A DNA stretch of 64,000 bases from Macrostomum lignano (taxonomy: Eukaryota), in assembly GCA_002269645.1 (NCBI GenBank), contig NIVC01001981.1:1-64000 (forward strand). Reading direction: 5' to 3'. The position numbers and the translations under genes are program-made. This document shows, in pieces, positions 7,701 through 53,126 of the stretch. Within the stretch, counting starts at the first letter, position 1, and each line of letters begins with the position of its first letter. The notes beneath the pieces were generated by a model. That model saw nothing but the letters and a program-made list of their open reading frames with translations. It was not told the DNA's origin and did not search any database.

Positions 7701-8896
7701 ACAGCGAGTTTCGTAGCATAAAAATTAGGGAATAATAATTGTAGAAATTCATTTTTATTAAAAGCATTAAGTTTGAGGCTTTAAAGTCATAAAGTTTGTA
7801 ACTTACGGTAATAAATTTCGGGATTTCAGAGTCTAATTCTGCGATTTCCGAGTCAAAAAGTTTAGAATTTTAGATTCATAAAGTTGGGGATTCATAGCCA
7901 TAGGGTTTGGGATTTCAGAGTCATGAAGTTAGAGACTGATAGCCATAAAGTTTGGATTTGTAGAGTCATAAGCGTTGGAATTTCAGAGTCATAAAGTTTG
8001 GGATTTCAAAGTCACCATTTGGGATTTCAGAGTCACCATTTGGGATTTCAGAGTCATAAATTTTGGGATTTCAAAGTCACCATTTGGGATTTCAGAGTCA
8101 ACATTTGGGATTTCAAAGTCACCATTTGGGATTTCAAAGTCACCATTTGGGATTTCAGAGTCAACATTTGGGATTTCAAAGTCACTATTTGGGATTTCAA
8201 AGTCACCATTTGGGATTTCAAAGTCACCATTTGGGATTCCAGAGTCACCATTTGGGATTTCAAAGTCACCATTTGGGATTTCAAAGTCACCATTTGGGAT
8301 TTCAGAGTCACCATTTGGGATTTCAGAGTCATAAAGTTTGGGATTTCAAAGTCACCATTTGGGATTTCAGAGTGCTGAAGTTTGGGATTTCAAAGTCACC
8401 ATTTGGGATTTCAAAGTCACAATTTGGGATTTCAGAGTCGTTAAGTTTGGGATTTCAGAGTCGTGAAGTTTGGGATTTCGGAGTCGTGAAGTTTGGGATT
8501 TCGGAGTCATAAAGTTCGGAGTTTCAAGACTCGTGCATTTTGGAATTTAGAATTACATATTTGTCTTATACATCATCACGCACGGTTAAGCTCAATATCA
8601 TTCGCCTACGCATCCCGCAGGTGAAGGAGAAAAAGCAGAAGCTGAAAGACTCCGAGGTGGACCTGCAGCGCCGCGCGGACCAGATGCGCAAACAGCTGGA
8701 ACAGCAGGAGGCCGAGCTGGCAGAACGCCGGCGCCAGTTCGAAGCCGAGAAGCGCGCCTGGGAGTCTGCGCAGGCTCAGGGCGGCGGCGGCGACTACGGA
8801 GACAGCGGCGGAGGTGGCGGCGTGTCCGCCACAATGGACGCCATCCACGGGAAGGAGAAGAGCAAGTCCGAGAAGAAGAAGGGCCTGTTTAAATAA
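4783..8896 (+). CDS. SEPT7: Septin, SEPT7/peanut group; exons 4783-5016, 5509-5661, 6796-7665, 8621-8896 (510 aa)
   Basis: GT-AG junctions, all phase 0. VGFANLPNQ|[27 protein letters not shown]-loop, [11 protein letters not shown], and a C-terminal coiled coil [15 protein letters not shown]|[12 protein letters not shown] ending KKGLFK. Confidence 0.93.
5160..5410. repeat. 21-bp degenerate minisatellite in septin intron 1
   Basis: Unit about ATGGCGCCAAAATGAGTGCCT; reverse-complement relative of the array at 3315-3455. Confidence 0.8.
5715..6710. repeat. 28-bp minisatellite in septin intron 2
   Basis: Unit TTATAGAGTCTGACTCTTTCTCTGACTC, about 35 copies. Confidence 0.95.
7770..8530. repeat. 21-bp minisatellite in septin intron 3
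   Basis: Unit TTTGGGATTTCAAAGTCACCA, degenerate at both edges. Confidence 0.95.
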
Positions 8897-10303: not shown

Positions 10304-11019
10304 AGCCAGTCAATCCCTTATCACTAAATGTACACTGGCCAGTCAATCCCTTATCACTAAATGTACACTAGCCAGTCAATCCTTTACCCCTCAATGTACA
10401 TTAGCCAGTCAATCCCTACCACTAAATGTACACTAGCCAATCGAATAACTTTGTATCGCAGTCCTTAAAATAAAAAAATCACTTAAATGCATGCGATCGC
10501 GTATTTCCCAGTCCATACATTGATAATTTGGTAAAAACAGACGGCTAAAAGCAATCGATCCACAGCTCAATGTCTTCGGGTCTGCCATCTGGATGGAGCT
10601 CCAAGGTCAGCAGCAAAACTGGTCGGACCTATTATGTTAACGACGTCACCAAGGAGACGCAGTGGGAAGTGCCTACTCATCCGGCTACAGGTAATTATAA
10701 GTTTAATGCAGCGTTTTTCCTTACATGTTTTGCCAATCTCTTCCCATCAAATACACAGGCCAGTCAATCCCTACCCCTCAATGTACACTAGCCAGTCAAT
10801 CCTTACCTCTCAATGTACGCTAGCCAGTCAATCCCTTACCACTTAATGTACACTAGCCAGTCAATCCTTACCCCTCAATGTACACTAGTCAGTCAATCCC
10901 TTACCCCTCAATGTACACTAGCCAGTCAATCCTTACCCCTCAATGTACACTAGCCAGTCAATCCTTACCCCTCAATGTACACTAGCCAGTCAATCCCTTA
11001 CCCCTCAATGTACACTTAG
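10304..11019. repeat. 32-33-bp minisatellite present both upstream of the Pin1 ATG (about 10304-10440) and in its intron (about 10755-11019)
   Basis: Unit AATGTACACTAGCCAGTCAATCCCTTACCCCTC. Confidence 0.9.
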
Positions 11020-11378
11020 GCGACGGCGGACACGGCAGGGGCGGCACCGTGCGCTGCCTCCACCTGCTCGTGAAGCACCGCGGCTCGCGCCGCCCGTCCT
11101 CCTGGAAGGAGCAGACGGTGACTCGCAGCCAGGAGGAGGCTGAGGCCATGGTGAAAGAGTTCCGCCGCCGAATCGTGTCCGGGGAAGCGAGTTTCGAGCA
11201 GCTGGCCGAGCTTGAGTCGCACTGCAATTCGGCCAAACGAGGCGGCGACCTCGGCGCCTTCGGCCGCGGCCAGATGCAGCCGCCCTTCGAGGAGGCCGCT
11301 TTCGCTTTGCAGGTTGGCGAGATCAGCGACCTGGTGTACACCGACAGCGGGGTGCACATTATCAAGCGGGTCGCCTGA
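10570..11378 (+). CDS. PIN1: Peptidyl-prolyl isomerase Pin1 (WW + parvulin); exons 10570-10690, 11020-11378 (159 aa)
   Basis: WW domain (GW..YYVN..QWEVP). Phase-1 intron G|GTAATT...TTAG|GC. Parvulin motifs [37 protein letters not shown] at 11414-11419. Confidence 0.95.
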
Positions 11379-12539: not shown

Positions 12540-15210
12540 TTACTGCCGCTTAGCAGCCGACGCTACCACCTGTTGTTTTCGCACCTGGTAGCCTCGAAAA
12601 CCAGCTTGGATTTTTGCCGCCGCGGCTGCCTCCTCGGATTCGTCGTCTGCAGGTCGGGCTCGCAGACGATCCACCGCGGCCTCGGCCACCGCTTGGTGCT
12701 GCTGGGCGAGACTGACGTCCGTCTGATTGAAAAGCACGAAATCGACGAGTGACTTCACCTCCTTGAGTACGTCGTCCGGCTCTTTGTCCCCAAGCACCTA
12801 GAGTTGTTGATATTGGATGTATATTCAAGGTCGTTTTTGATGTCGTAGCGCAAAACGGGAGTGAGGTGATGGGTGCAGGAGTGAGGTGGTGGGTGCAGGA
12901 GTGAGGTGGTGGGTGCAGGAGTGAGGTGGTGGGTGCAGGAGTGAGGTGGGTGCAGGAGTGAGGTGGTGGGTGCAGGAGTGAGGTGGTGGGTGCAGGAGTG
13001 AGGTGATGGGTGCAGGAGTGAGGTGATGGGTGCAGGAGTGAGGTGGTGGGTGCAGGAGTGAGGTGGTGGGTGCAGGAGTGAGGTGGTGGGTGCAGGAGTG
13101 AGGTGGGTGCAGGAGTGAGGTGGGTGCAGGAGTGAGGTGGGTGCAGGAGTGAGGTGGTGGGAGCAGGAGTGAGGTGGGTGCAGGTTCAGGAGTGAGTCAG
13201 GGCTTTTTTAGCAACAACTGCTCACCACACAGAGCAAGCCAGCCTCGTCAAAGTGCTGAACCACCGGCAGAGTCTCCTCCTTGAATCGGCGCATTCTTTC
13301 AGCGGCTGTGTCCGCCGACTGCGACCCAGCCTCAGCCAGGCGCTCCATCATGTCGGCCTCGTGACAGTCGATGAGCAGCGCGAGATCTGGCGCGCCAACC
13401 CGGGCATACATGGCTCTGAGGCCTTCTTCCGTTTCTGGGAAGCCCTGCAGTGCGCGTACATGTACATGTAAGTGTTACATATGTACATGCACTTATCATT
13501 GTGGCGCCTCTTATTTTATGTATATTTAGACGCTACATGTTTCCCATTTGGGCCACATACATGTACACGTAAATTTCTGTACTGTTGTACATGTACATTA
13601 TATTTTGGCACTAAACGATTCCCATCATCAATAAAAGCTCGAGTCCTCCCTCACCTTCACAATCATGGGTTTTCCGTCCCCAGCGGCCGCCTCTAATCGA
13701 TCCACGGCCTCATCGGGTTCCAAGTCCGAGGCCAAGTCCACAATAGTCAGTTTATTATCGTTCAATCGTCCCAGACGTTCCAGGCAGGTCCTCCGGCCGC
13801 TGCCCGGGCCGCCCAACAGCAGCACCATCGGAGGCGGCTTGCTAGACTGTCCGTCGGCCACTCGGTCAGCTGGTTGTCCGAGATTGACCAGACGACGAAT
13901 GCTGGTCACCTGGCCGGCGGCAGCGGCAGGACCGCCGGTTTTCGCAGACGACGTTTCTGTCGGCTCCGCTCGGGTGGACTCGGACGCCAGCAGGGCGTCG
14001 AGCACCCGGACGGCCTCCTGGTTGACGGCCTCGTCGCTGGCGTCGGGATCGACCGGCAGCACCAGCAGTTTGCCGTCTTCGTCCAGCACCCGACAGGCGG
14101 GCAGGCAGGCCGTCTTAAACTCGGAGATTCGCCGGGCGATGTCACCGGGCTGGTGTTTGTTCTCGGACAGGAGTCGCTGCTGCAGGCTGGACTCTTCGAA
14201 GTCGAGGAGTAGGGCGTGATCGACTCGTTGGATCTGAAAGCCGGTTTAGTTTGCAGAGTCAGTATGCTGTGCATCAAGGTCAGGTCAGTCTAGTTTAGGT
14301 CAGGTCAGTCTAGTTTAGGTCAGGGTCAGCCTAGTTTAGGTCAGGCCAGTCTAGTTTAGGTCAGGCCAGTCTAGTTTAGGTCAGGTCAGTCTAGTTTAGG
14401 TCTGGGTCAGCCTAGTTTAGGTCAGGCCAGTCTAGTTTAGGTCATGTCAGTCTAGTTTAGGTCAGGTCAGTCTAGTTTAGGTCAGGTCAGTCTAGTTTAG
14501 GTCAGGTCAGTCTAGTTTAGGTCAGGTCAGTCTAGTTTAGGTCATGTCAGTCTAGTTTAGGGCAGGTCAGTCTAGTTTAGGTCAGGTCAGTCTAGTTTAG
14601 GTCATGTCAGTCTAGTTTAGGGCAGGTCAGTCTAGTTTAGGTCAGGTCAGTCTAGTTTAGGTCAGGTCAGTCTAGTTTAGGTCAGGTCAGCCTAGTTTAG
14701 GTCAGGTCAGCCTAGTTTAGGTATACAACCCTGAACTCTAAGATAGCGTCATCAAAATCAATCCCGAAGATGACGTCATCAAGGCCCTCACATGCTCCAT
14801 GTAGTCCTCCAGCTGCGCCAGGCTCCTCGGATATCCCTCGATCACCAGGCCGCGGCAGCTGGCATCGGCTGTGGCCTCATTAATAGCGCCAATCACCGCG
14901 GCGAGCACCTCCAAGTCTGGCGCCATTTCACGCGCCCTTTCATCGTTTCCCGCGCGCAGCAGGGCGCCAGTGCTGATCAGTTGGCAGTCGTAGCGATCAG
15001 CGACCAGACGGGCGACGCGAGCCTTGCCGCTACCGGGGCCTGCGATGACCAGCAGCACCGGGCAGTTCAGCGGCCGCGCCAGCTCGGGCACGCGGGCTCC
15101 GGCGGCGGCGCCGATCGGTGGCAGCACCGGCTTCTTGTCGAATAGGGAGTCGGCGCGGGACGAAGCTGCGGGCGCGAGATGGGAGAGGAAAGGGGTTCAA
15201 TAGGCTGATC

Positions 15211-15248
<38 letters not shown>

Positions 15249-15256
15249 CGTCTTAG

Positions 15257-15291
<35 letters not shown>

Positions 15292-15364
15292 ACGTCTGCC
15301 TTTCTGTCTGTCTGCCTTTCTGTCTGTGTGTGTGTGTGTCTGTCTGTCTGTCTGTCTGCATTTC

Positions 15365-15400
<36 letters not shown>

Positions 15401-15843
15401 TGTCTGTCTGTCTGTCTGACTGTCTGTCCTTCTGTCTTAGTGTCTGTCTGTCTTATTGTCTGTCTGTCAGTCTTAGTATCTGTCTGTCTGTCTGTCTGCT
15501 TGCCTGCCGGCAACTCAGCAACTAACCCCGACTGGAGGTCGGACGGCTGCCCCTCGGCGGAGTCACGGGCGGCAGCGGGGTCTTGGTCCTCTTGGCCTCC
15601 AGGAACAGGTCCCAGCGCACGCTGGACACGCCTTTGGCTTTGATTTTCTCCAGGCAGTCTTGTAGGTAGGCCACGTGATCACCGGGCCTGTGGTACATTA
15701 GACCCGTCATCAGGCACTGAAGTGGGAGTTATATTTTCGTGTAGCTGCATTTAACGTGAAAGAAACGAGAATGAAACATCTAATTTTACCTCAAAAAGCT
15801 GAGGAATCTCGCGCTTGGTAATGTAGTCCTTCGCGTCAGACAT
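12540..15843 (-). CDS. AK5: Adenylate kinase 5-like protein (docking domain, two degenerate AK domains, IQ motif); exons 15843-15790, 15716-15527, 15165-14792, 14233-13655, 13444-13226, 12797-12540 (557 aa)
   Basis: The N-terminus [18 protein letters not shown]|[11 protein letters not shown] matches the AK5 docking domain. P-loop-like AGPGSGK and GGPGSGR, IEGYPR and KGFP motifs, C-terminal [16 protein letters not shown]. All five introns are GT-AG with consistent phases. Confidence 0.85.
12860..13195. repeat. 20-bp minisatellite in AK5-like intron 5
   Basis: Unit GGGTGCAGGAGTGAGGTGGT, about 17 copies. Confidence 0.95.
14278..14722. repeat. 20-bp minisatellite in AK5-like intron 3
   Basis: Unit AGGTCAGGTCAGTCTAGTTT, about 22 copies. 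Confidence 0.95.
15210..15500. repeat. (TCTG)n/(TG)n microsatellite in AK5-like intron 2
   Basis: Direct reading. Confidence 0.95.
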
Positions 15844-18639: not shown

Positions 18640-20230
18640 CACCAACAAACTGCCGCCTCAGACACCCAACAAACTGCCGCCCCAGACACCCAACAAACTG
18701 CCTCAGACACCCAACAAACTGCCGCCTCAGACACCCAACAACTGCCGCCCCAGACACCCAACAAACTGCCTCAGACACCCAACAAACTGCCGCCCCAGAC
18801 ACCCAAAAAACTGCCGCCTCAGACACCCAACAAACTGCCGCCCCAGACACCCAACAAACTGCCGCCTCAGACACCCAACAAACTGCCGCCCCAGACACCC
18901 AACAAACTGCCGCCCCAGACACCCAACAAACTGCCGCCCCAGACACCCAACAAACTGCCGCCCCAGACACCCAACAAACTGCCGCCTCAGACACCCAACA
19001 AACTGCCGCCTCAGACACCCAACAAACTGCCGCCCCAGACACCCAACAAACTGCCGCCTCAGACACCCAACAAACTGCCGCCCCAGACACCCAACAAACT
19101 GCCGCCTCAGACACCCAACAAACTGCCGCCTCAGACACCCAAAAAACTGCCGCCTCAGACACCCAACAACTGCCGCCTCAGACACCCAACAAACTGCCAC
19201 CCCAGACACCCAACAAACTGCCGCCTCAGACACCCAACAAACTGCCGCCCCAGACACCCAACAAACTGCCGCCCCAGACACCCAACAAACTGCCGTCCCA
19301 GACACCCAACAAACTGCCGCCTCAGACACCCAACAAACTGCCGCCCCAGACACCCAACAAACTGCCGCCCCAGACACCCAACAAACTGCCGCCTCAGACA
19401 CCCAACAAACTGCCGCCCCAGACACCCAACAAACTGCCGCCTCAGACACCCAACAAACTGCCGCCTCAGACACCCAACAAACTGCCGCCCCAGACACCCA
19501 ACAAACTGCCGCCTCAGACACCCAACAAACTGCCGCCTCAGACACCGAACAAACTGCCGCCTCAGACACCCAACAAACTGCCGCCTCAGACACCCAACAA
19601 ACTGCCGCCCCAGACACCCAACAAACTGCCGTCCCAGACACCCAACAAACTGCCTCAGACACCCAACAAACTGCCGCCTAAGACACCCAACAACTGCCGC
19701 CTCAGACACCCAACAAACTGCCGCCTCAGACACCCAACAAACTGCCGCCTCAGACACCCAACAAACTGCCGCCTCAGACACCCAACAAACTGCCGCCTAA
19801 GACACCCAACAAACTGCCGCCCCAGACACCCAACAACTGCCGCCTAAGACACCAAACAAACTGCCGCCTCAGATACCCAACAACTGCCGCCTTAAACACC
19901 CAACTGCCGCCCCTGCAACCCAACAACTGCCGCCTCAGACACCCAACAAACTGCCGCCTCAGATACTCAACAACTGCCGCCTTAAACACCCAACTGCCGC
20001 CCCTGTAACCCAACAACTGCCGCCTCAAAAACACCCAACAAACTGCCACTCCTGACACCCAACAAACTGCCTCTCCAGACACCCAACAAACTGCCGCCCT
20101 GACACCCAACAAACTGCCACTCGTGACACCCAACAAACTGCCTCTCCAGCCACCCAACAAACTGCCATCCCAGACACCCAGAAAACTGCTGCGACAGCCA
20201 CCCAACAAACTGCCGCCCTGAACACCCAGA
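18640..20230. repeat. 24-bp minisatellite
   Basis: Unit CTCAGACACCCAACAAACTGCCGC, about 65 copies, with 21-22-bp deletion variants. Confidence 0.95.
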
Positions 20231-21299: not shown

Positions 21300-22615
21300 G
21301 GGGATTTGGAGTCGGGGATTTATAATCTGGGAGTTGGAATCTGGGATATGGAATCGGGGATTTGGAATCTGGGATATGGAATCGGGGATTTGGAGTCTGG
21401 TATTTGGAATCTAAGATTTGGAATCTGGGATTTGGAATCTGTGATTTGGAGTCTGGGATTTGGAATCTGGGATATGGAATCGAGGATTTGGAGTCTGGGA
21501 TTTGGAATCTAAGATTTGGAATCTGGGATTTGGAATCTAGGATTTTGAATCTGAAATTTGGAATCTGGGATTTGGAATCTGTGATTTGGAGTCTGGGATT
21601 TGGAATCTGGGATATGGAATCGAGGATTTGGAGTCTGGGATTTGGAATCTAAGATTTGGAATCTGGGATTTGGAATCTAGGATTTCGAATCTGAAATTTG
21701 GAATCTGTGATTTGGAATCTAAGATTTGGAATCTGGGATTTGGAATCGGGGATTTGGAGTCTGGGATTTGGAATCTAAGACTTGGAATCTGGGATTTTGA
21801 ATCGGGGATTTGGAGTCTGGGGTTTGGAATCTGGGATATGGAATCGGGGATTTGGAGTCCGGGATTTGGAATCTGGGATATGGAATCGGGGATTTGGAGT
21901 CTGGAATTTGGAATCTGGGATATGGAATCGGGGATTTGGAGTCTGGGATTTGGAATCTAAGATTTGGAATCTGGGATTTGGAATCGGGGATTTGGAGTCT
22001 GGGATTTGGAATCTAGGATTTTGAATCTGAAATTTGGAATCTGGGATTTGGGATCGGGGATTTGGAGTCTGGGATTTGGAATCTAAGATTTGGAATCTGG
22101 GATTTGGAATCGGGGATTTGGAGTCTGGGATTTGGAATCTAGGATTTTGAATCTGAAATTTGGAATCTGGGATTTGGGATCGGGGATTTGGAGTCTGGGA
22201 TTTGGAATCTAAGATTTGGAATCTGGGATTTGGAATCGGGGATTTGGAGTCTGGGATTTGGAATCTAGGATTTTGAATCTGAAATTTGGAATCTGGGATT
22301 TGGGATCGGGGATTTGGAGTCTGGGATTTGGAATCTAAGATTTGGAATCTGGGATTTGGGATCGGGGATTTGGAGTCTGGGATTTGGAATCTGGGATATG
22401 GAATCGGGGATTTGGAGTCCGGGATTTGGAATCTGGGATTTGGAATCTGGGATTTGAAGTCTGGGATTTGGAATCTGGGATTTGGAATCTGGGATTTGGA
22501 ATCTGGGATTTGGAATCTGGGGGTTGGAATCGGAGATTTGAATATGGGATTGGGAAGAATCTGCTATGTGAAATCGGGGATTTGGAATATAGAAACTGGA
22601 GTTTGGAATTCTGAG
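21300..22615. repeat. 7-bp-based satellite (GGAATCT/GGGATTT) with higher-order blocks
   Basis: Direct reading. Confidence 0.95.
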
Positions 22616-22887
22616 CGGAATGTCCAAAACCTAAGGAAAAATATTAAATGAAATTTTTAACGCACAATGAGCGCCAAGTCCTGTGCGAGGCATTGAAGTT
22701 ATTTCACTCAATAAATTATCTTAAAGGTGCACTATGCCGAATTTATTGATTAAGATTTTTTCAATGGTTTAATTGGAACTTATGATGTGGCGGCCTCGCT
22801 TACTCAGTTTTATTTTTCATTGCCTCAGGTGTGCCGGCTTATCAGTCCGCCGATAGGTTATTATCAAGTAATCAGCTCGCAAGGCAA

Positions 22888-24161
22888 TTAGCGCTTCTTG
22901 TAGTCGGCAAATCGTTTGTAGTCGGCAAAACGTTTGCGAAAGTCGGCGAAACGTTTGTAATCGGCGAAGCGCTTCTTATAGTCGGCGAATCGTTTGATGT
23001 TCAGACCGACAGGCTGGCGGTCCAGCAGCTGCTTCAGGCTCAGGGACCGGAGCGGCTCAATTGCAGACCAGCGCTGACGGCCGGACGACTGCGGCTGCGG
23101 CATCCGCTCTGGGGGGTCTGAAAGTTTTGTTGCTAACTGAGAAAACAAAATTCACCTGCAGAGGGAGTCAGCTGCAGAGGGGGGAGTCAGCTGCAGAGGG
23201 GGGAGTCAGCTGCAGAGAGGGGAGTCAGCTGCAGAGGGGGGAGTCAGCTGCAGACGGGGGAGTCAGCTGCAGAGGGGGAGTCAGCTGCAGAGGGGGAGTC
23301 AGCTGCAGAGAGGGGAGTCAGCTACAGAGAGGGGAGTCAGCTGCAGAGGGGGGAGTCAGCTGCAGAGGGGGGAGTCAGCTGCAGAGGGGGGAGTCAGCTG
23401 CAGAGGGGGGAGTCAGCTGCAGAGAGGGGAGTCAGCTGCAGAGAGGGGAGTCAGCTGCAGAGGGGGAGTCAGCTACAGAGGGGGGAGTCAGCTGCAGAGG
23501 AGATAGTCAGCTGCAGAGGGGGGAGTCAGCTGCAGAGGGGGGAGTCAGCTGCAGAGGGGGGAGTCAGCTGCAGAGGGGGAGTCAGCTGCAGAGGGGGAGT
23601 CAGCTGCAGAGGGGCGCCAGCTGCAGAGGGGGGGAGTCAGCTGCAGAGGGGGGAGTCAGCTGCAGAGGGGGGGAGTCAGCTGCAGAGAGGGGAGTCAGCT
23701 ACAGAGAGGGGAGTCAGCTGCAGAGAGGGGAGTCAGCTGCAGAGGGGGGAGTCAGCTGCAGAGGGGGGAGTCAGCTGCAGAGGGGGGAGTTAGCTACAGA
23801 GGGGGGAGTCAGCTGCAGAGGGGGGAGTCAACTACAGAGAGGGGAGTCAGCTGCAGAGGGGGGAGTCAGCTGCAGAGGGGGGAGTCAGCTACAGAGGGGG
23901 GAGTCAGCTAGATAGGGGGGAGTCAGCTACAGAGGGGGGAGTCAGCTGCAGAAGCATTTCAGAAATCAAAATCTACAGAATTTTGAAACCAGATCAGGTA
24001 CTTTTGCAATAAAAGATTAGATTAAACAAAATTAGTACTATTTGGTGCGCATCAATCAATCAAGAATTATGGTTTATTGATGACCCACCTCGCCCGTTCG
24101 CAGCAGCAACCGCGCTGGCCAGGAGGACTGCAGCCAGGATCAAAATCAGCTGTCGAATCAT
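22888..24161 (-). CDS. Secreted neuropeptide/prohormone-like precursor; exons 24161-24089 and 23117-22888 (100 aa), encoding FADY x4 and FADF x1
   Basis: Exon 1 encodes a signal peptide, MIRQLILILAAVLLASAVAAANGR, ending in the phase-1 donor G|GTGGGT. The phase-1 acceptor TTTCAG|AC restores the frame. The C-terminus is KR-FADY-KKR-FADY-KR-FADF-RKR-FADY-KR-FADY-KKR-stop, with synonymous codon differences between copies. AATAAA on the minus strand at 22814-22809. Confidence 0.85.
23157..23952. repeat. About 19-bp G-run minisatellite in the precursor intron
   Basis: Unit GGGGGAGTCAGCTGCAGAG, about 40 copies, variable G-run length. Confidence 0.95.
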
Positions 24162-24609
24162 TGGTTGTTTTCAGTCGCTTTTTGTTTTCTTGATTTGCTT
24201 ACCTGTGAAAGAAAGTTGCGAGCTTTAACTAATTATTGTTAGAAGTCCTCTATAACGAAATGTTTTCTCATATATAGTTTCAACTCACTGAATGAAGTGT
24301 TATAAATATCTATTGTGTGGATGAAATGGCATCAAATACGAGCCGTATATTAGGGAATCATTAGCACCTGAGCATCACCTCAAAGGGAATTATTAGCACC
24401 ACCTGAGGGGGAATCATTACCTAAGAAGACCTCAAAGAGATTAAAAAATGAGCAATAAAATAGGACAAATGCAGTCAACACCTAAGAAACTGGAGCGCAA
24501 CGTCCTTGATCTACTTCAGTTGTCCAAGTCACCCACAATTATTCGTTAGGTTTCAATGAATCTATAGGCCTTAATCGAGTAATTGATAGCTAAAATTAGA
24601 CAAATAATA

Positions 24610-25439: not shown

Positions 25440-25811
25440 TATTAAAGTCCGAGACAATGCAGATGTCAACGGCATGCTGCTGCCACAGAGGTGAATTTCA
25501 AGCTCTCACGGATTGTAAAAAGTAGATTTTATTGCTGGTGTAAGCTCTAAGGGCTGTGTGGATGGCTGTATGGATATGAATGAAGATTTTGAGTTGAATT
25601 TGCCTGGACAATGTAGCATTAATTATGTATATACATCCAGCATTGTGAAGCTCGCTTGTTCTCAAGTTATCCCTGCTGGGCTGCTGCTGGGCAGTGAAAA
25701 CATGCGGGTTTTTGCTACTGCTGGCTCTCTCTTCCAGAGGAAAGCATTTCTGCTGCAGGCATTAGGAAATATATTGTGACTACTGCTGCTGCGAACTGCG
25801 AGCATTGTCTC

Positions 25812-26696
<885 letters not shown>

Positions 26697-27280
26697 AAAA
26701 CCATTTTGTAATCAAATTGCAACTTACGAATCAGTCCAACGAAGGCTCTCTTTAAGCAGCAGAGATTCTGTGGGCGCAAGAAACAAACTGATTGATTTCA
26801 GCTTTTATGACCGCAATCTTCAGCCAATGACAGCTCAGGGCGCCCTGGTGCCTCCCCGGAGTTCAATGTCGCATTCAGTCTGGGCAAAATCTGTTTGAAT
26901 CTGCCTCATTGGTTGGACTTTCACTTTTTTTGCTCCCATCGGAGTTTCGTTTCAAAGTTTTTCGTGAGGAACTTTTTTAATCTTTTTGCTTTTTATTGAT
27001 GCAACAAAGCTTCAAAAGTTGGTATTGTCTTTGTTGGAAGCAATAACCGGGTTGGTGCGGACCCGGAAAAGGAGCTAAAACATTGGAAAGCAATGACAAA
27101 ATTAAAATTTTTTATTAATTTATGAAAGAATTCTTTTTTGGATTGCAAAATTTACTGCATTCAGATGGGTTTTGAGAGCTTTTTCACATCTGCCTGCGCC
27201 CGAGCGGCACATTCCGAAATTTCAATTTAATGCCATAAAAAAGTAATCTGTCTAGTCAGCTGTTAACAAATTCAATTCAT

Positions 27281-29879: not shown

Positions 29880-30910
29880 TAGATCCTAATCCAGATTGTA
29901 ACCCTTGATAATCCAGATCCCAATCCATGATAATCCAGATCCCAATCCACGATAATCCAGATCCCAATTCATGATAATCTAGATCCCAATCCATGATAAT
30001 CCAGATCCCAATCCAGATCCCAATCTAGATCCCAATCCACGATAATCCAGATCCCAATTCATGATAATCTAGATCCCAATCCATGATAATCTAGATCCCA
30101 ATCCAGATCCCAATCTAGATCCCAATCCACGATAATCCAGATCCCAATTCATGATAATCTAGATCCCAATCCATGATAATCTAGATCCCAATCCAGATCC
30201 CAATCTAGATCCCAATCCACGATAATCCAGATCCCAATCCAGATCCCAATCCAGATTGTAACCCTTGATAATCCAGATCCCAATCCATGATAATCCAGAT
30301 CCCAATCCATAATAATCCAGATCCCAATCCAGATCCCAATCTAGATCCCAATCCACGATAATCCAGATCCCAATCTAGATCCCAATTCATGATAATCCTG
30401 ATCCCAATTCATGATAATCCAGATCCCAATCCACGATAATCCAGATCCCAATCCATGATAATCCAGATCCCAATCCACGATAATCCAGATCCCAATCCAC
30501 GATAATCCAGATCCCAATCCACGATAATCCAGATCCCAATCCACGATAATCCAGATCCCAATCCACGATAATCCAGATCCCAATCCATGATAATCCAGAT
30601 CCCAATCCACGATAATCCAGATCCCAATCCACGATAATCCAGATCCCAATCCACGATAATCCAGATCCCAATCCATGATAATCCAGATCCCAATCCACGA
30701 TAATCCAGATCCCAATCCACGATAATCCAGATCCCAATCCACGATAATCCAGATCCCAATCCATGATAATCCAGATCCCAATCCACGATAATCCAGATCC
30801 CAATCCACGATAATCCAGATCCCAATCCACGATAATCCAGATCCCAATCCATGATAATCCAGATCCCAATCCACGATAATCCAGATCCCAATCCACGATA
30901 ACCCAGATGC
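29880..30910. repeat. 22-bp minisatellite
   Basis: Unit ATAATCCAGATCCCAATCCACG. Confidence 0.95.
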
Positions 30911-30946
30911 CAATCCGCTAAATCACAACATTTCGCAAACCCGCAG

Positions 30947-33900
30947 TCAGTGACCAAGGCTTCAAATGCTCGTGGCCGTTTATTGAACACCCGAACTGGA
31001 AGGTCTCCAAGGATCTGAGCTCAGTGAAGTTCGATACCACGATAAAAAACAACTTGTTAACTCAGGCGAATCTTCTATCGTTTGCCTTCTTTTCCTCCAT
31101 GGGCCTGGCCATTGTTCTCGTGCACCTGGCCGGCAGGTACAGCACCAGGCGCAAATACTACGAACCCCTGGCCTCGGAGGTCAAGGCCTACTCAGCCGAG
31201 ATGGGCAGCACAGTGCAGAAGACCGCCCTGGATAGGGCCGTTTTTGACTGCCAGGAAGTTCCAGACTTCGCTGTTAGCATAGTGCTGGCTATGCTGGACC
31301 CGCTGAGCCTCAGCTACTCCTTCGATGTGGCGCTGCACGACTACGGAAGGTGATCCCAGATCCCAGATCCCAGATCCCAGATCCCAGATCCTAGATCCCA
31401 GATCCCCATCCCAGATCCTAGATCCCAGATTTCAGATCTATATCCCGGATCCTAGATCCCGGATCCCAGATCCCAAGATCCCAGATCCTAGATCCCAGAT
31501 CCCCATCCCAGATCCTAGATCCCAGATCCTAGATCCCAGATCCTAGATCCCAGATCCTAGATCCCAGATTCCAGATTCCAGATTTCAGATCCCAAATTCC
31601 AGATCCTAGATCCCGGATCCCAGATCCTAGATCTCAGATCCCAGATTTCAAATTCCAGATTCCATATCCCAGATCCTAGATCCCGGATCCCAGATCCTAG
31701 ATCCCAGATCCCAGATTTCAGATTCCAGATTCCATATCCCAGATCCCAGATACCAAGATCCCAGATCCTAGATCCCAGATCCCCATCCCAGATCCTAGAT
31801 CCCAGATTTCAGATCTATATCCCGGATCCTAGATCCCGGATCCTAGATCCCGGATCCCAGATCCCAAGATCCCAGATCCTAGATCCCAGATCCCCATCCC
31901 AGATCCTAGATCCCAGATTCCAGATTCCAGATTTCAGATCCCAAATTCCAGATCCTAGATCCCGGATCCCAGATCCTAGATCCCAGATCCCAGATTTCAA
32001 ATTCCAGATTCCATATCCCAGATCCTAGATACCAAGATCCCAGATCCTAGATCCCAGATCCCCATCCCAGATCCTAGATCCCAGATTTCAGATCTATATC
32101 CCGGATCCTAGATCCCGGATCCCAGATCCCAAGATCCCAGATTCTAGATCCCAGATCCCCATCCCAGATCCTAGATCCCAGATTCCAGATTCCAGATTTC
32201 AGATCCCAAATTCCAGATCCTAGATCCCGGATCCCAGATTCCAGATCCCAGATCCCAGATCCCAGATTTCAGATTCCAGATTCCATATCCCAGATCCCAG
32301 ATACCAAGATCCCAGATCCTAGATCCCAGATCCCAGATACCAAGATCCCAGATCCTAGATCCCAGATCCCCATCCCAGATCCTAGATCCCAGATTTCAGA
32401 TCTATATCCCGGATCCTAGATCCCGGATCCCAAATACCAAGATCCCAGATCCTAGATCCCAGATCCCCATCCCAGATCCTAGATCCCAGATTTCAGATCT
32501 ATATCCCGGATCCTAGATCCCGGATCCCAAATACCAAGATCCCAGATCCTAGATTTCAGATCTATATCCCGGATCCTAGATTTCAGATCTATATCCCGGA
32601 TCCTAGATCCCGGATCCCAAATACCAAGATCCCAGATCCTAGATCCCAGATCCCCATCCCAGATCCTAGATCCCAGATTTCAGATCTATATCCCGGATCC
32701 TAGATCCCGGATCCCAAATACCAAGATCCCAGATCCTAGATCCCAGATCCCCATCCCAGATCCTAGATCCCAGATTTCAGATCTATATCCCGGATCCTAG
32801 ATCCCGGATCCTAGATCCCGGATCCTAGATCCCGGATCCTAGATCCCGGATCCTAGATCCCGGATCCTAGATCCCGGATCCTAGATCCCGGATCCTAGAT
32901 CCCGGATCCTAGATCCCGGATCCTAGATCCCGGATCCTAGATCCCGGATCCTAGATCCCGGATCCTAGATCCCGGATCCCAGATCCCAAGATCCCAGATT
33001 CTAGATTCCAGATTCCATATCCCAGATCCCAGATACCAAGATCCCAGATCCTAGATCCCAGATTTCAGATCTATATCCCGGATCCTAGATCCCGGATCCC
33101 AAATCCCAAGATCCCAGATTCTAGATCCCAGATCCCCATCCCAGATCCTAGATCCCAGATTCCAGATTCCAGATTTCAGATCCCAAATTCCAGATCCTAG
33201 ATCCCGGATCCCAGATCCTAGATCCCAGATCCCAGATTCCAGATTCCTTATCCTAGATCCCAGATCCCAGATCCCAGAATCTGAAAATACAGAAGCCAAA
33301 CATTCTCAACCCTTGCAGAGCCGTTCTGCCCACCATCGTAACGCTGCTGCTAACCAGATCCGTGTACTACACAATCGCCTATCACGTGTTCACCTATTGC
33401 TCTCGCGAGAATTTCAACTGTCTATCAGATTTCATTCATCGTCGATTTAATTCAATCGGCTTGGCCAACGTCAGCGCCACGCTGATGCTGGCCTACGAGA
33501 TCTGCCAGTTGGTGCTGATGTACAACCAGACGGCCAGAGAGATGTCCAGCATGATTGGCAGCAGCTTCCAATTTTGGCTTGTCTGTCTAAGCTGCATCAC
33601 CTTCTGCATGGCCGTGTGCGGCACTGGCAGTCTGGTGAAGATCTGCTTGCTGATTTACGGCTTGAGCATCATTGTGTACCTCTGGATGTGCCTGCAGATT
33701 CGGTTTCTGTTCGTGATGGAGGAGCCGAAAACGCATTTCGCTGCTTGGCAGTTGAAATCTTTTGAAACCAGGAGGGAACAGGCCATGAGCACACCAGACA
33801 CTCTGCTGTACGAGAGCAACATCATCTGCTCCCTGCTGGCAGCGCCACTGCTGCACACCGCCTCCAGGCTTGATCAGGTGAGCGCGACTTTGTGGCGCCA

Positions 33901-36900
33901 TTTTTGACCAATTTGTGCGTGTAGTTTTCTAGCGTCATTCTTCTTAGCGACTTTGTGGCGCCATTTTTGACCAATTTGTGCGGGTAGTTTTCTAGCGTCA
34001 TTCTTAGCGACTTTGTGGCGCCATTTTTGACCAATTTGTGCGGGTAGTTTTCTAGCGTCATTCTTATCGAGTTTTTGGCGCCTTTTTGACCAATTTGTGC
34101 GGGTAGTTTTCTAGCGTCATTCTTATCGACTTTGTGGCGCCATTTTTGACCAATTTGTGCGGGTAGTTTTCTAGCGTCATTCTTATCGAGTTTTTGGCGC
34201 CATTTTTGACCAATTTGTGCGGGTAGTTTTCTAGCGTCATTCTTATCGAGTTTTTGGCGCCATTTTTGACCAATTTGTGCGGGTAGTTTTCTAGTGTCAT
34301 TCTTATCGAGTTTTTGGCGCTATTTTTGACCAATTTGTGCGGGTAGTTTTCTAGCGTCATTCTAATCGAGTTTTTGGCGCCATTTTTGATCAATTTGTGC
34401 GGGTAGTTTTCTAGCGTCATTCTTAGCGACTTTGTGGCGCCATTTTTGACCAATTTGTGCGGGTAGTTTTCTAGCGTCATTCTTAGCGACTTTGTGGCGC
34501 CATTTTTGACCAATTTGTGCGGGTAGTTTCATGTTTGTGAAGTTGTCCACCAACCCCACACCTCAGACCGAGTACACAGTCTACCAACCCCACACCTCAG
34601 ACCGAGTACACAGTCTACCAACCCCACACCTCAGACCGAGTACACAGTCTACCAACCCCACACCTCAGACCGAGTACACAGTCTACCAACCCCACACCTC
34701 AGACCGAGTACACAGTCTACCAACCCCACACCTCAGACCGAGTACACAGTCTACCAACCCCACACCTCAGACCGAGTACACAGTCTACCAACCCCACACC
34801 CTCAGACCGAGTACACAGTCTACCAACCCCACACCCTCAGACCGAGTACACAGTCTACCAACCCCACACCCTCAGACCGAGTACACAGTCTACCAACCCC
34901 ACACCCTCAGACCGAGTACACAGTCTACCAACCCCACACCCTCAGACCGAGTACACAGTCTACCAACCCCACACCCTCAGACCGAGTACACAGTCTACCA
35001 ACCCCACACCCTCAGACCGAGTACACAGTCTACCAACCCACACCCTCAGACCGAGTACACAGTCTACCTACCCCACACCCTCAGACCGAGTACACAGTCT
35101 ACCAACCCCACACCCTCAGACCGAGTACACAGTCTACCTACCCCACACCTCAGACCGAGTACACAGTCTACCAACCCCACACCCTCAGACCGAGTACACA
35201 GTCTACCTACCCCACACCTCAGACCGAGTACACAGTCTACCAACCCCACACCCTCAGACCGAGTACACAGTCTACCAACCCCACACCCTCAGACCGAGTA
35301 CACAGTCTACCAACCCCACACCCTCAGACCGAGTACACAGTCTACCAACCCCACACCCTCAGACCGAGTACACAGTCTACCAACCCCACACCCTCAGACC
35401 GAGTACACAGTCTACCAACCCCACACCCTCAGACCGAGTACACAGTCTACCTACCCCACACCCTCAGACCGAGTACACAGTCTACCAACCCCACACCTCA
35501 GACCGAGTACACAGTCTACCAACCCCACACCCTCAGACCGAGTACACAGTCTACCAACCCCACACCCTCAGACCGAGTACACAGTCTACCAACCCCACAC
35601 CCTCAGACCGAGTACACAGTCTACCAACCCCACACCCTCAGACCGAGTACACAGTCTACCAACCCCACACCCTCAGACCGAGTACACAGTCTACCAACCC
35701 CACACCCTCAGACCGAGTACACAGTCTACCTACCCCACACCCTCAGACCGAGTACACAGTCTACCAACCCCACACCCTCAGACCGAGTACACAGTCTACC
35801 TACCCCACACCCTCAGACCGAGTACACAGTCTACCAACCCCACACCCTCAGACCGAGTACACAGTCTACCAACCCCACACCTCAGACCGAGTACACAGTC
35901 TACCTACCCCACACCTCAGACCGAGTACACAGTCTACCAACCCCACACCCTCAGACCGAGTACACAGTCTACCAGTCGCTAATCCGCCGGTTCCGCCGCA
36001 AGAGAGTCTTTGTCCGCGCTTTCCTACTCAACGTCAGCTACAACATGTGCCACAAGACTCTTCTCAGGTCTTTGTTTGCACTGCGCGCTAAAGAGGGCTG
36101 CGATCAGGTTGCAGCCGGAATCACCTGTCACTACGGTATGCTGAGCAAGGCGATGACTTCGCACGCCTCCTTGAAGGCTCTCTACCTGTCGTTGATTTTC
36201 TATCGGCCTGCTGGCTCGGCGGCGTCAAGGTGGTGGCCACGGCGCACGCGGCTACGCGCAGTCGAATGATGAGATCGTTTGTGGAGCTGTGCCTCATTGG
36301 CCAGCGCTGGGCCCACATGACTCGCTGGCGGAGGCAGAACGGCCTCATCTTGTTCAGGGGCTGCCGGTTGATTGACCTGCAGATCTACGTGTATAATGTG
36401 AGGGCCTGAGGGATGGCAGCTGGGGAGAGGGAGATGGGAGAGGGAGATGGGAGAGGGAGATGGGAGAGGGAGATGGGAGAGGGAGATAGGAGATAGGAGA
36501 GGGAGATGGGAGAGGGAGATGGGAGAGGGAGATGGGAGAGGGAGATGGGATAGAGAGAGATGGGAGGGGGAGATGGGAGAGGGAGATGGGAGAGGGAGAT
36601 GGGAGATGGGAGATGGGAGATGGGAGAGGGAGATGGGAGAGGGAGATAGGAGAGGGAGATGGGAGAGGGAGATGGGAGAGGGAGATGGGAGAGGGAGATG
36701 GGAGAGGGAGATGGGAGAGGGAGATGAGGGAGGGAGAAGGGAGAGGGAGATGGGAGAGGGAGATGGGGGAGGGAGAAGGAGAGGGAGATGGGAGAGGGAG
36801 ATGGGGAGGGAGATGGGAGAGGGAGATGGGAGAGGGAGATGGGAGAGGGAGATGGGAGAGAGAGATGGGAGAGAGAGATGGGAGAGGGAGATGGGGAGGG

Positions 36901-38070
36901 AGATGGAAAGGGAGATGGGAGAGGGAGATGGGAGAGGGAGATGGGAGAGAGAGATGGGAGAGAGAGATGGGAGAGGGAGATGGGGGAGGGAGATGAGAGA
37001 GGGAGATGGGAGAGGTAGATGGGAGAGGGAGATGGGATAGAGAGAGATGGGAGGGGAGATGGGAGAGGGAGATGAGGAGAGTGAGACGGAGACGATGAAA
37101 GTCAATCAATGAATCGATTGCCCAACCCCACCAGACTTTCATAGTTGCTCTCACCTGGTGCACTCTGCTGTTCTGCTTGGACAATCTGCCTCTGGATCCA
37201 TCGGTGCTGAAGGTGCAATTCGCCAACTATCTGATCCTGGACCTGCGCTTCATGATCTTCCTGAATGCCACCCTGCTAGGCCTGACCTTCCGCCGGCTGA
37301 GCCGCTCCGTGCTGTACTGGATTCTCGCGCTGTCCCTGCTGCTGTACTCCTACCAGATCCTGTGGGCCGACATGCTGACAGGCGACACCCTTCGCTACAA
37401 GCTGATGACGCCGATCTACAAGTCCCACGCCGCCTGGCTGCGCCGGAACTGCTCCAAGAAAATCCGGCTCCGCCCGGTGATCAACGTCGGCCAGAGAATT
37501 GTCGATCACGAGGTGCTGCACCTGGCGGATTCCGACGCATTCTACCCGACCATCGTGGGCCTGACGTGGTGTCTGGCCGCTCTGGCCAGCTGCCTGTTTG
37601 ACAGTCAGCTGGCGGTGCTGAAGAGCCCCTATTACTGCATTGGGGACTTGGCCAGCGTCAACTTCGCCAGGAGAATTAGCTCCGGGCTGGTGAACTGGGT
37701 CGCTCATCTTCTCAGTGCCGCCAGGGCTTCGCTGCAGTCGGTCCGCTGGTCCAATAAGCAAATCAATCGGAAATTTTGCTGCTGCCCCGCCAGCTGCCTC
37801 TGCTGCTCCTGCTGCGAGAAATCCGCGTCTCTGGCGTCGGCTGAGCAAAAAATGCAGCAACAGCAGCAACAGCAGCAGCAGCTGACGCCTCTGCTTCAAC
37901 AGGAGGAACTGGCCACAATGTCCATCGCCGAGCAGCTGGTGCGGGAGAAGTACACCAGGGAGGAGACTGAGCTGGTCCTGAGCAGCCTGGCTGAGGCGGG
38001 ACTAAGGCAGCGACTCATCGATGGCAGCAGGCGGACGAGCGCGTTCAGCGTCACTTCCGATCCAACCTAG
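30947..38070 (+). CDS. Uncharacterised multi-pass membrane protein (at least about 770 aa); exons 30947-31349, 33319-33877, 35976-36397 (apparent 1-nt deletion near 36205), 37135-38070; 5' end unresolved
   Basis: GC-rich coding blocks with matching splice phases (1, 2, 0, 0), many hydrophobic segments, and a Cys-rich (CCCPASCLCCSCC) and poly-Q tail. Family not recognised. Confidence 0.7.
31352..33280. repeat. 7-bp-based intronic satellite (AGATCCC/AGATCCT/AGATTCC) with higher-order units
   Basis: Begins 2 nt after the GT donor at 31350. Confidence 0.95.
33883..34530. repeat. 60-bp intronic minisatellite, about 10.5 copies
   Basis: Unit GCGACTTTGTGGCGCCATTTTTGACCAATTTGTGCGGGTAGTTTTCTAGCGTCATTCTTA. 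Confidence 0.95.
34548..35975. repeat. 34/35-bp intronic minisatellite, about 41 copies, ending at the splice acceptor
   Basis: Unit CCTCAGACCGAGTACACAGTCTACCAACCCCACAC; the last copy ends TCTACCAG. Confidence 0.95.
36415..37085. repeat. 13-bp polypurine minisatellite (GGGAGAGGGAGAT)
   Basis: Direct reading; same family at 39665-40285. Confidence 0.95.
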
Positions 38071-38637
38071 CTGATCCCAATCTAGCTGATCCCAATCTAG
38101 CTGATCCCAATCTAGCTGATCCCAATCTAGCTGATCCCAATCTAGCTGATCCCAATCTAGCTGATCCCAATCTAGCTGATCCCAATCTAGCTGATCCCAA
38201 TCTAGCTGATCCCAATCTAGCTGATCCCAATCTAGCTGATCCCAATCTAGCTGATCCCAATCTAGCTGATCCCAATCTAGCTGATCCCAATCTAGCTGAA
38301 CCCAATCTAGCTGATCCCAATCTAGCTGATCCCAATCTAGCTGATCCCAATCTAGCTGATCCCAATCTAGCTGATCCCAATCTAGCTGATCCCAATCTAG
38401 CTGATCCCAATCTAGCTGATCCCAATCTAGCTGATCCCAATCTAGCTGATCCCAATCTAGCTGATCCCAATCTAGCTGATCCCAATCTAGCTGATCCCAA
38501 TCTAGCTGATCCCAATCTAGCTGATCCTAATCTAGCTGATCCCAATCTAGCTGATCCTAATCTAGCTGATCCCAATCTAGCTGATCCTAATCTAGCTGAT
38601 CCCAATCTAGCTGATCCTAATCTAGCTGATCCCAATT
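38071..38637. repeat. 15-bp homogeneous minisatellite, about 38 copies, immediately after the stop codon
   Basis: Unit CTGATCCCAATCTAG. Confidence 0.97.

Positions 38638-40581: not shown

Positions 40582-53126
<12,545 letters not shown>

What the first reader, a model, noticed from the sequence alone, without database searches (positions are those of the whole stretch)
22888..24161. Hidden prohormone-like gene releasing FADY/FADF tetrapeptides (achatin-like?)
Seen: splicing 24161-24089 to 23117-22888 gives a 100-aa ORF with a clear signal peptide and five tandem FADY/FADF units, each flanked by KR, KKR or RKR. The DNA copies differ at synonymous positions (TTC/TTT, GAC/GAT, TAT/TAC, CGA/CGC/CGT), which is expected from selection on the peptide rather than a DNA repeat. 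Established: dibasic sites are prohormone convertase sites, and the lack of a Gly before the basic residues means the peptides are not amidated. Molluscan/annelid achatin (GFAD, with D-Phe at position 2) is also a non-amidated repeated tetrapeptide. Inference: this is a divergent achatin-like or new peptide family that I do not recognise, possibly carrying a D-amino acid.
Basis: partly seen in the sequence, partly recalled or inferred. Interest (0 to 1): 0.85.

Follow-up and report, generated by a model that had tools for sequence, protein, structure and literature searches.

The report
Hidden flatworm FADY peptide precursor gene
An unannotated two-exon gene in the flatworm Macrostomum lignano very probably encodes a small secreted precursor that is cut into five copies of a new four-residue signalling peptide (FADY/FADF); it is a new example of an ordinary kind of neuropeptide gene, and it is not an achatin.

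Summary
On the minus strand, exon 1 (24161-24089) joins exon 2 (23117-22888) through a GT..AG intron. This gives a 100-aa ORF with a textbook signal peptide, a 44-aa spacer and KR-FADY-KKR-FADY-KR-FADF-RKR-FADY-KR-FADY-KKR-stop.

It looks like a real gene. This ATG is the only one of 1725 in the window that passes a crude signal-peptide test. Five of the six variable DNA sites among the copies are synonymous third positions (p about 0.004). Exon GC3 is 0.70, against flanks at 0.31-0.38 GC. AATAAA lies 74 nt after the stop.

The window is Macrostomum lignano contig NIVC01001981.1. No protein in 5.8 billion clusters or 1.84 billion representatives resembles the precursor, and no held paper mentions FADY, so it appears unannotated.

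Achatin membership fails. There is no N-terminal Gly, no aromatic residue at position 2 and no acidic C-terminus. Twenty per cent of random tetrapeptides in the same scaffold align with an achatin precursor equally well.

The closest known family in register is the non-amidated AxxxDF family of nemerteans and brachiopods (AKFNDF, ASWLDF). The match is suggestive (0.2-3% of random tetrapeptides) but unproven. Expression, processing and any D-residue remain untested.

The parts
24270..24276 (-). TATA-like element TATATAT, 115 nt upstream of the ATG (possible core promoter)
   Evidence: consensus match only, function not shown
24089..24161 (-). Exon 1 coding part: the ATG, the signal peptide and the first base of codon 25 (MIRQLILILAAVLLASAVAAA|NGR + G). 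It has an n-region with Arg3, a 10-12 residue hydrophobic core, and a small-residue c-region offering ASA|V, AVA|A or AAA|N cleavage sites.
   Evidence: the only ATG of 1725 in the window that passes the signal-peptide heuristic; an in-frame TGA lies 4 codons upstream
23118..24088 (-). Phase-1 intron of 971 nt, with GTGGGT donor and TTTCAG acceptor
   Evidence: the non-repeat parts are 31% GC, against 59% for the exons
23163..23952 (.). Minisatellite inside the intron: 19-bp unit (minus strand approximately CTGCAGCTGACTCCCCCCT), 41.8 copies, 93% matches. It probably contributes to the gene being missed by annotation.
22996..23117 (-). Exon 2, spacer (pro-region) part: DPPERMPQPQSSGRQRWSAIEPLRSLSLKQLLDRQPVGLNI
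   Evidence: no Pfam match
22891..22995 (-). Peptide array KR-FADY-KKR-FADY-KR-FADF-RKR-FADY-KR-FADY-KKR. Units start at 22989, 22968, 22950, 22929 and 22911.
   Evidence: TRF period 18/39 with only 74-80% DNA matches, while the peptide is conserved
22888..22890 (-). Stop codon TAA, directly after the last KKR
22809..22814 (-). AATAAA polyadenylation signal, 74 nt after the stop
   Evidence: consensus match only

Best explanation
This is a real, unannotated two-exon gene of Macrostomum lignano. It encodes a 100-aa multi-copy peptide preprohormone, most likely a neuropeptide precursor.

The proposed mechanism has five steps. (1) The N-terminal signal peptide (cleaved after about Ala17-Ala21) takes the protein into the ER and the regulated secretory pathway. 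(2) A PC2-type prohormone convertase cuts after each KR, KKR or RKR site. (3) A carboxypeptidase E-type enzyme trims the basic residues. (4) Four copies of FADY and one of FADF are released with free C-termini, because no Gly precedes the basic residues and so there is no amidation. A pro-region fragment of about 40 aa is also released. (5) The tetrapeptides act as secreted signals on an unidentified receptor.

Shown from sequence: the ORF, the splice-site consensus and phase, signal-peptide-like features, a dibasic site on both sides of every copy, synonymous-biased divergence of the copies, coding-like composition, and a polyA signal. Inferred: transcription and splicing, neuronal expression, actual cleavage, bioactivity and the receptor.

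The peptide is not an achatin. Its nearest known relative in register is the spiralian AxxxDF family, in which [F/W]-x-D-[F/M/T] precedes KR. Orthology to that family is possible but unproven (my estimate is about 0.25).
For: The gene model is exact. The signal peptide exon is unique in the window. Five of the 6 variable sites among the copies are synonymous third positions, p = 0.0039. The extra basic codon changes K to R by three nucleotide differences (AAG to CGC) and still stays basic.

CDS GC1/2/3 is 0.63/0.43/0.70, like the neighbouring septin exon (0.59/0.36/0.65). The flanks and the non-repeat intron are 0.31-0.38 GC. Only one frame of exon 2 is open and the stop follows the last KKR directly. 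AATAAA lies 74 nt downstream.

The organism is M. lignano (100% match to BOX15_Mlig016777g1, contig NIVC01001981.1). It has a PC2 homologue expressed in the nervous system whose knock-down is lethal (PMC4490696).

The architecture of a signal peptide followed by KR-flanked short copies is that of MS-verified spiralian precursors such as AxxxDF and achatin (PMC8557429). FADF is 3/4 identical in register to brachiopod FFDF, FVDF and FNDF. Only 0.23% (Lingula) and 3.1% (Lineus) of random tetrapeptides in the same scaffold score as well.
Against: There is no expression evidence of any kind. The exact 100-aa product and its unspliced variants are absent from a 15-billion-protein collection that includes transcriptome-derived assemblies.

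No homologue was found in any other species, so there is no cross-species conservation to back the within-gene signal. The selection test rests on only 6 variable sites. The signal-peptide test is a home-made heuristic, not SignalP.

The genome is full of minisatellites, some of which mimic dibasic-flanked repeats. The AxxxDF match is not corrected for the roughly 70 families one could compare with, and hhalign gives only 10% probability.
Confidence: 0.7

Rival explanations
1. The gene is real and encodes the same secreted, convertase-processed FADY/FADF peptides, but they are not neuronal. They would be made by gland, epidermal or reproductive (for example prostate) cells and act as a pheromone, seminal-fluid, defence or adhesive-related peptide.
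For: Everything that supports a secreted multi-copy precursor is equally compatible with this. The lack of homologues outside the species fits fast-evolving reproductive or defensive secretions. Kexin- or furin-type processing of repeat precursors is not restricted to neurons (established knowledge).
Against: Tandem very short identical peptides, each flanked by KR, are the hallmark of neuropeptide precursors in spiralians (PMC8557429). The in-register resemblance to the MS-verified AxxxDF neuropeptides points the same way. There are no tissue data either way.
Confidence: 0.15
2. This is not a functional gene. It would be a chance ORF created by a short period-18/21 tandem repeat in a minisatellite-rich genome, with a fortuitous upstream signal-like ORF, or else a decaying relic that is no longer expressed.
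For: TRF reports the array as a DNA tandem repeat. The window holds many minisatellites whose translations also show dibasic-flanked repeats. No annotated or assembled protein matches it. There is no cross-species conservation.
Against: The copies are only 74-80% identical as DNA yet nearly identical as peptide, with 5 of 6 variable sites synonymous. Only one frame is open, and the stop follows the last cleavage site directly. The only signal-peptide-like ATG of the window sits 971 nt upstream on the same strand, with a phase-compatible GT..AG. Exons and flanks show a coding-like GC3 contrast. A polyA signal is present.
Confidence: 0.1
3. It is a divergent orthologue of achatin. Its peptides would carry a D-residue and act on the achatin receptor.
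For: It shares a repeated non-amidated tetrapeptide with a 6-residue period and the letters F-A-D with Achatina GFAD. BLASTP against a nemertean achatin precursor gives E = 0.004 for the single comparison.
Against: That alignment is out of register with the cleavage sites (FAD-YKR against FGD-KRG). In register, 0 of 4 positions match. Of random tetrapeptides in the same scaffold, 20.4% score as well. All achatins start with Gly, have the aromatic residue at position 2 and end in D, E or N. The likely ancestral form is GFGN, so 'FAD' is a derived molluscan state (PMC6188537). Planarians have no recognisable achatin (PMC3890597).
Confidence: 0.03

Closest known systems
AxxxDF (ASWLDF/AKFNDF) multi-copy neuropeptide precursors of nemerteans and brachiopods (Thiel et al. 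2021, PMC8557429)
   Same: Both have a signal peptide followed by many copies of a short, non-amidated peptide, each flanked by KR or KKR. Counting back from the C-terminal cleavage site, both show an aromatic residue at -4, a variable residue at -3, Asp at -2 and Phe (or Tyr here) at -1. FADF compared with FFDF, FVDF or FNDF is 3/4 identical. The local alignment RKRFADYKR / RAKFVDFKR is 5/9 identical and 7/9 similar. AxxxDF peptides were confirmed by mass spectrometry in Lineus.
   Different: The known peptides are hexapeptides starting with Ala-[S/K/T]. Here those two positions are basic residues, so the product is a tetrapeptide. The nemertean precursors carry long acidic spacers and a conserved C-terminal domain (…ETIKVIREMLLKD…), whereas this precursor stops right after the last copy. 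Tyr is the commonest last residue here and is never seen in the listed AxxxDF peptides. The statistical support is only suggestive. The family has not been reported from flatworms.
Achatin precursors (GFAD, GFGD, GFGN, GFFD)
   Same: Both have repeated non-amidated tetrapeptides flanked by KR, a 6-residue period and a small precursor with a signal peptide.
   Different: This peptide has no N-terminal Gly, Ala rather than an aromatic residue at position 2, and an aromatic rather than acidic or amide C-terminus. It shows no in-register identity and no similarity above random.
FMRFamide-type and flatworm npp multi-copy precursors
   Same: They share the same general architecture and the same presumed processing machinery (PC2 and carboxypeptidase). 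The cleavage context KR|F… is also the same.
   Different: Those peptides end in Gly-KR and are amidated, with RFamide or similar C-termini. FADY/FADF has no Gly and no Arg-Phe motif. No FADY-like sequence occurs in the planarian prohormone supplements or the cestode npp list.

Membership tests
Multi-copy neuropeptide preprohormone (generic kind) | N-terminal signal peptide | tested here: met
   Basic n-region (R3), a hydrophobic core of 10-12 residues and AXA-type cleavage motifs. It is the only one of 1725 ATGs to pass the heuristic. SignalP was not available.
Multi-copy neuropeptide preprohormone (generic kind) | Each peptide copy is flanked on both sides by dibasic convertase sites | tested here: met
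   KR, KKR or RKR lies on both sides of all five copies.
Multi-copy neuropeptide preprohormone (generic kind) | Peptide copies conserved by selection rather than by recent DNA duplication | tested here: met
   Five of 6 variable sites are synonymous third positions, p = 0.0039. DNA matches are only 74-80%.
Multi-copy neuropeptide preprohormone (generic kind) | Transcribed, spliced and expressed in neurons or endocrine cells, with peptides detectable | not testable with these tools
   No M. lignano transcriptome or peptidome was reachable. The exact product is absent from the protein collection.
Multi-copy neuropeptide preprohormone (generic kind) | Processing enzyme present in the organism | not tested
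   Literature only: a PC2 homologue (RNA815_2403.2) is expressed in the M. lignano nervous system (PMC4490696).
Achatin | Tetrapeptide with N-terminal Gly | tested here: not met
   Residue 1 is Phe in all five copies. All achatins listed start with G.
Achatin | Aromatic residue at position 2 (the residue isomerised to the D-form) | tested here: not met
   Position 2 is Ala.
Achatin | C-terminal Asp, Glu or Asn directly before the basic site | tested here: not met
   The C-terminal residue is Tyr or Phe. Asp is at position 3.
Achatin | Precursor similarity above what KR periodicity alone gives | tested here: not met
   20.4% of random tetrapeptides in the same scaffold score at least as high.
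Achatin | D-residue present, and activation of the achatin receptor only by the D-form | not testable with these tools
   This needs chiral peptidomics and a receptor assay (PMC10089201 describes the property).
AxxxDF (ASWLDF/AKFNDF) | Multi-copy, KR-flanked, non-amidated peptides behind a signal peptide | tested here: met
AxxxDF (ASWLDF/AKFNDF) | C-terminal motif [F/W]-x-D-[F/M/T] directly before KR | tested here: met
   FADF matches fully. FADY matches with a conservative Tyr at the last position.
AxxxDF (ASWLDF/AKFNDF) | Hexapeptide with N-terminal Ala | tested here: not met
   The product is a tetrapeptide. The two N-terminal positions are occupied by basic cleavage residues.
AxxxDF (ASWLDF/AKFNDF) | Precursor-level homology | tested here: inconclusive
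   hhalign gives 10% probability and aligns only the repeat. BLASTP gives E = 0.41. Randomisation gives 0.23% (Lingula) and 3.1% (Lineus), uncorrected for the number of families.

The most novel reading that the evidence does not exclude
FADY/FADF founds a previously unrecognised flatworm transmitter family of non-amidated tetrapeptides that carries an unusual modification. This could be D-Ala at position 2 (as in frog dermorphin) or sulfotyrosine in the Asp-Tyr context. It would act through a receptor with no known ligand. A D-residue would make it the first D-amino-acid-containing neuropeptide of Platyhelminthes. A milder version is that it is the flatworm orthologue of the AxxxDF family, which would push that family back to the spiralian ancestor.
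Probability: 0.08. Interest if true: 0.75.

Novelty: new member of a known kind. Interest (0 to 1): 0.45.

Why it matters
M. lignano is a transgenic flatworm model, and the library I could search holds no systematic neuropeptide catalogue for it. This locus shows that small, repeat-interrupted prohormone genes are missing from its annotation. It also yields a concrete, easily synthesised candidate ligand (FADY, [M+H]+ 515.2136; FADF, 499.2187) for receptor deorphanisation, RNAi and behavioural work.

If the link to AxxxDF peptides holds, a family thought to be restricted to nemerteans and brachiopods would extend to Platyhelminthes. That would date it to early spiralians. It would also show how a new dibasic site can shorten a neuropeptide. 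If the link does not hold, this is one more lineage-specific flatworm neuropeptide, which is useful but expected.

Tried and rejected
- **Homology searches.** A word-indexed search of 5.8 billion protein clusters with the 100-aa product found nothing at E <= 10. A full HMMER scan of 1.84 billion representatives with exon 2 gave three hits, all low-complexity repeat proteins of 313-955 aa (ADYxKT, FVDYQP and similar), which I rejected as spurious. Pfam gave no match.
- **Degenerate DNA pattern.** A pattern for FADYKRFAD[YF] run against metagenome contigs gave two hits. L003 is a 17-bp direct DNA repeat in AT-rich non-coding sequence. L002 lies in the alternative frame of another ORF. I rejected both.
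- **A wasted search.** One protein search was meant to retrieve the annotated ADK-like neighbour, so that the annotation over 22.9-24.2 kb could be listed. It returned nothing at the threshold I set. The absence of any gene model over the locus is therefore inferred, not read from the annotation table.
- **Rfam.** No match anywhere in the window.
- **Literature.** 'FADY' and its variants in full texts match only author names, FLAG-tag junctions and PD-L1 peptides. They do not occur as a repeated or dibasic-flanked peptide in the supplements of Collins 2010, Thiel 2018, the T. crassiceps npp list or Conzelmann 2013; the scattered letter matches there fall inside unrelated proteins. McVeigh 2009 and Bauknecht & Jekely 2015 are not held. 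Koziol 2016 did not turn up among the papers listed by the full-text searches.
- **Alternative splice choices.** The second GT in the donor region and the upstream AG at about 23137 both shift the frame into early stops.
- **Fungal-type KEX2-processed RiPP precursor.** I considered this and dropped it because the contig is metazoan (septin-7, Pin1-like and WAP+FN3 genes).

Full report
**1. The observation.** Reading the minus strand of 22700-24400 and splicing 24161-24089 to 23117-22888 gives a 303-nt CDS. Its product is MIRQLILILAAVLLASAVAAANGRDPPERMPQPQSSGRQRWSAIEPLRSLSLKQLLDRQPVGLNI-KR-FADY-KKR-FADY-KR-FADF-RKR-FADY-KR-FADY-KKR-stop.

Exon 1 is 73 nt, so the junction is phase 1. The donor is GAG|GTGGGT and the acceptor is ACTTTCAG|AC. 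An in-frame TGA lies four codons upstream of the ATG. The neighbouring alternative donor and acceptor both lead to early stops. Of the three minus-strand frames of exon 2, only this one is open.

**2. Is it more than chance?** The window is extremely rich in minisatellites. One of them (19 bp x 42 copies, 23163-23952) fills most of the intron. A control scan showed that other minisatellites also translate into dibasic-flanked repeated peptides: GGEGEGE at 60.4 kb and QFVGCL at 19.8 kb. That pattern alone therefore proves nothing.

Five features set the FADY array apart.

- Its DNA copies are only 74-80% alike, yet the peptides are almost identical. Of six variable sites in the 18-nt FAD[YF]-K-R core, five are third positions and synonymous, and the sixth is Tyr to Phe. 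The hypergeometric p is 0.0039, and simulation gives 1e-4 to 1e-3. The extra basic codon is AAG in two units and CGC in one: three nucleotide differences, and the residue is still basic.
- A crude signal-peptide filter applied to all 1725 ATGs on both strands of the window passes exactly one, the ATG at 24161. I wrote that filter after seeing the sequence.
- CDS GC1/2/3 is 0.63/0.43/0.70, like the septin exon in the same window (0.59/0.36/0.65). The flanks and the non-repeat part of the intron are 0.31-0.38 GC.
- The stop codon follows the last KKR immediately.
- AATAAA lies 74 nt downstream and a TATATAT lies 115 nt upstream.

**3. Organism and annotation status.** A septin exon at 6796-7716 is 100% identical to BOX15_Mlig016777g1 of Macrostomum lignano. 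The window is the first 64 kb of contig NIVC01001981.1 of assembly GCA_002269645.1. The annotated neighbours are a septin-7 orthologue, a Pin1-like gene and an adenylate-kinase-like gene.

The protein collection that holds those annotated proteins contains nothing resembling the FADY precursor. It does not contain the exact spliced or unspliced products either. A full HMMER scan of 1.84 billion representatives found only three unrelated low-complexity proteins. Pfam has no match. A degenerate DNA pattern for FADYKRFAD[YF] in metagenome contigs gave two chance hits.

Full-text searches for the peptide found nothing relevant, and neither did searches of four supplement sets. So the gene is hidden in the sense of being unannotated. 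As far as I could check, the peptide is undescribed. I could not read McVeigh 2009 (not held), and Koziol 2016 did not appear among the papers my full-text searches listed.

**4. How it most likely works.** The anatomy is that of a multi-copy neuropeptide preprohormone.

- The signal peptide would be cleaved after Ala17, Ala19 or Ala21.
- Prohormone-convertase cleavage would follow each KR, KKR or RKR site.
- Carboxypeptidase trimming would then release four FADY and one FADF.
- Their C-termini would be free, because no Gly precedes the basic residues.

M. lignano has a PC2 homologue expressed in its nervous system, and its knock-down is lethal (PMC4490696). Transcription, splicing, neuronal expression, cleavage and bioactivity are all inferred. 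No transcriptome or peptidome of this animal was reachable with the tools.

Possible modifications are speculation only. Asp-Tyr is a classical sulfation context. Position 2 is the usual site of L-to-D isomerisation in animal peptides, and here it is Ala.

**5. Comparison with known families.**

*Achatin.* Achatins are tetrapeptides GFGN, GFGD or GFAD (PMC6188537). The nemertean forms are GFGD, GFGE, GYGE, GFVD and GISD (PMC8557429). The achatin receptor responds only to the D-form (PMC10089201). In register from the cleavage sites, FADY and FADF share 0 of 4 positions with any achatin.

BLASTP against a nemertean achatin precursor gives E = 0.004, but it aligns FAD-YKR with FGD-KRG, which is out of register with processing. 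I also placed 3000 random tetrapeptides into the same KR/KKR/RKR scaffold, and 20.4% of them scored at least as well. Three defining features fail, so this is not an achatin. Planarians also lack a recognisable achatin (PMC3890597).

These are the non-amidated AxxxDF peptides of nemerteans (ASWLDF, ASWIDT, ASWLDM, ATWHDF) and brachiopods (AKFNDF, AKFVDF, AKFFDF). [quoted passage not shown]

In register, their last four residues are [F/W]-x-D-[F/M/T]. FADF is 3/4 identical to FFDF, FVDF and FNDF. RKRFADYKR aligns with RAKFVDFKR at 5/9 identical. Only 0.23% (Lingula) and 3.1% (Lineus) of random tetrapeptides score as well.

Several points count against membership. The N-terminal Ala-x is missing, replaced by basic residues. 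The nemertean C-terminal domain is absent. hhalign gives only 10% probability. The randomisation figures are not corrected for the roughly 70 families one could have compared. I rate orthology at about 0.25. It remains the closest known family in how the mature peptide looks.

**6. Verdict.** The interpretation as a hidden prohormone-like gene is supported by sequence evidence (confidence about 0.7 for a secreted, convertase-processed signalling-peptide precursor, most likely neuronal). The achatin label is rejected, and the D-amino-acid idea is unsupported.

The finding is a new member of a known kind. It is useful for a model flatworm with no neuropeptide catalogue among the papers I could search, and it would be mildly surprising if the AxxxDF link holds. 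Interest is 0.45.

Noticed in passing
window 1-64000: The window is the first 64 kb of M. lignano contig NIVC01001981.1 (GCA_002269645.1). Annotated genes are a septin-7 orthologue at 4783-8896 (+), a Pin1-like WW+rotamase gene at 10570-11378 (+) and an adenylate-kinase-like gene at 12540-15831 (-).
   Followed up: yes
window 18642-20217, 22000-22588, 23163-23952, 25776-26755, 30341-30990, 34531-35982, 36200-37226, 38051-38653, 48396-49351, 49698-51011, 54996-55960, 59033-60187, 60451-61655: There is a very heavy load of minisatellites, for example 24 bp x 67, 14 bp x 42, 19 bp x 42 and 27 bp x 45. They create long spurious ORFs in several frames on both strands, some mimicking dibasic-flanked peptide repeats. 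This is a trap for ORF-based reading of this genome.
   Followed up: partly
window 49256-49966 (-): This ORF has a WAP four-disulfide-core domain followed by a fibronectin type III domain (Pfam E = 3.6e-6 and 1.1e-4). The combination is typical of anosmin/KAL1-like secreted proteins, so this is probably an exon of such a gene.
   Followed up: no
window 24198-24208 (-): TTTCACAG|GTAAGC ends 42 nt upstream of the ATG. It reads equally well as a splice acceptor (a possible spliced-leader trans-splice site) or as a donor of an upstream non-coding exon. The 5' end of the transcript is therefore open.
   Followed up: no
window 22831-23121 (+): A 96-aa antisense ORF (GTG start) overlaps exon 2. It has no start ATG, no signal peptide and no match. 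It is most likely a by-product of the GC-rich codon usage of the sense strand.
   Followed up: partly
window 37177-38070 (+): A 297-aa ORF has hydrophobic segments, a Cys-rich stretch and a poly-Gln run, and no significant Pfam match. It may be an exon of an uncharacterised membrane protein.
   Followed up: no
window 23000-23090 (-), pro-region of the precursor: The spacer contains SSGRQR, a Gly followed by basic residues. If it is cleaved there, it could release an amidated N-terminal fragment (…PQPQSS-amide). This is purely a sequence observation.
   Followed up: no
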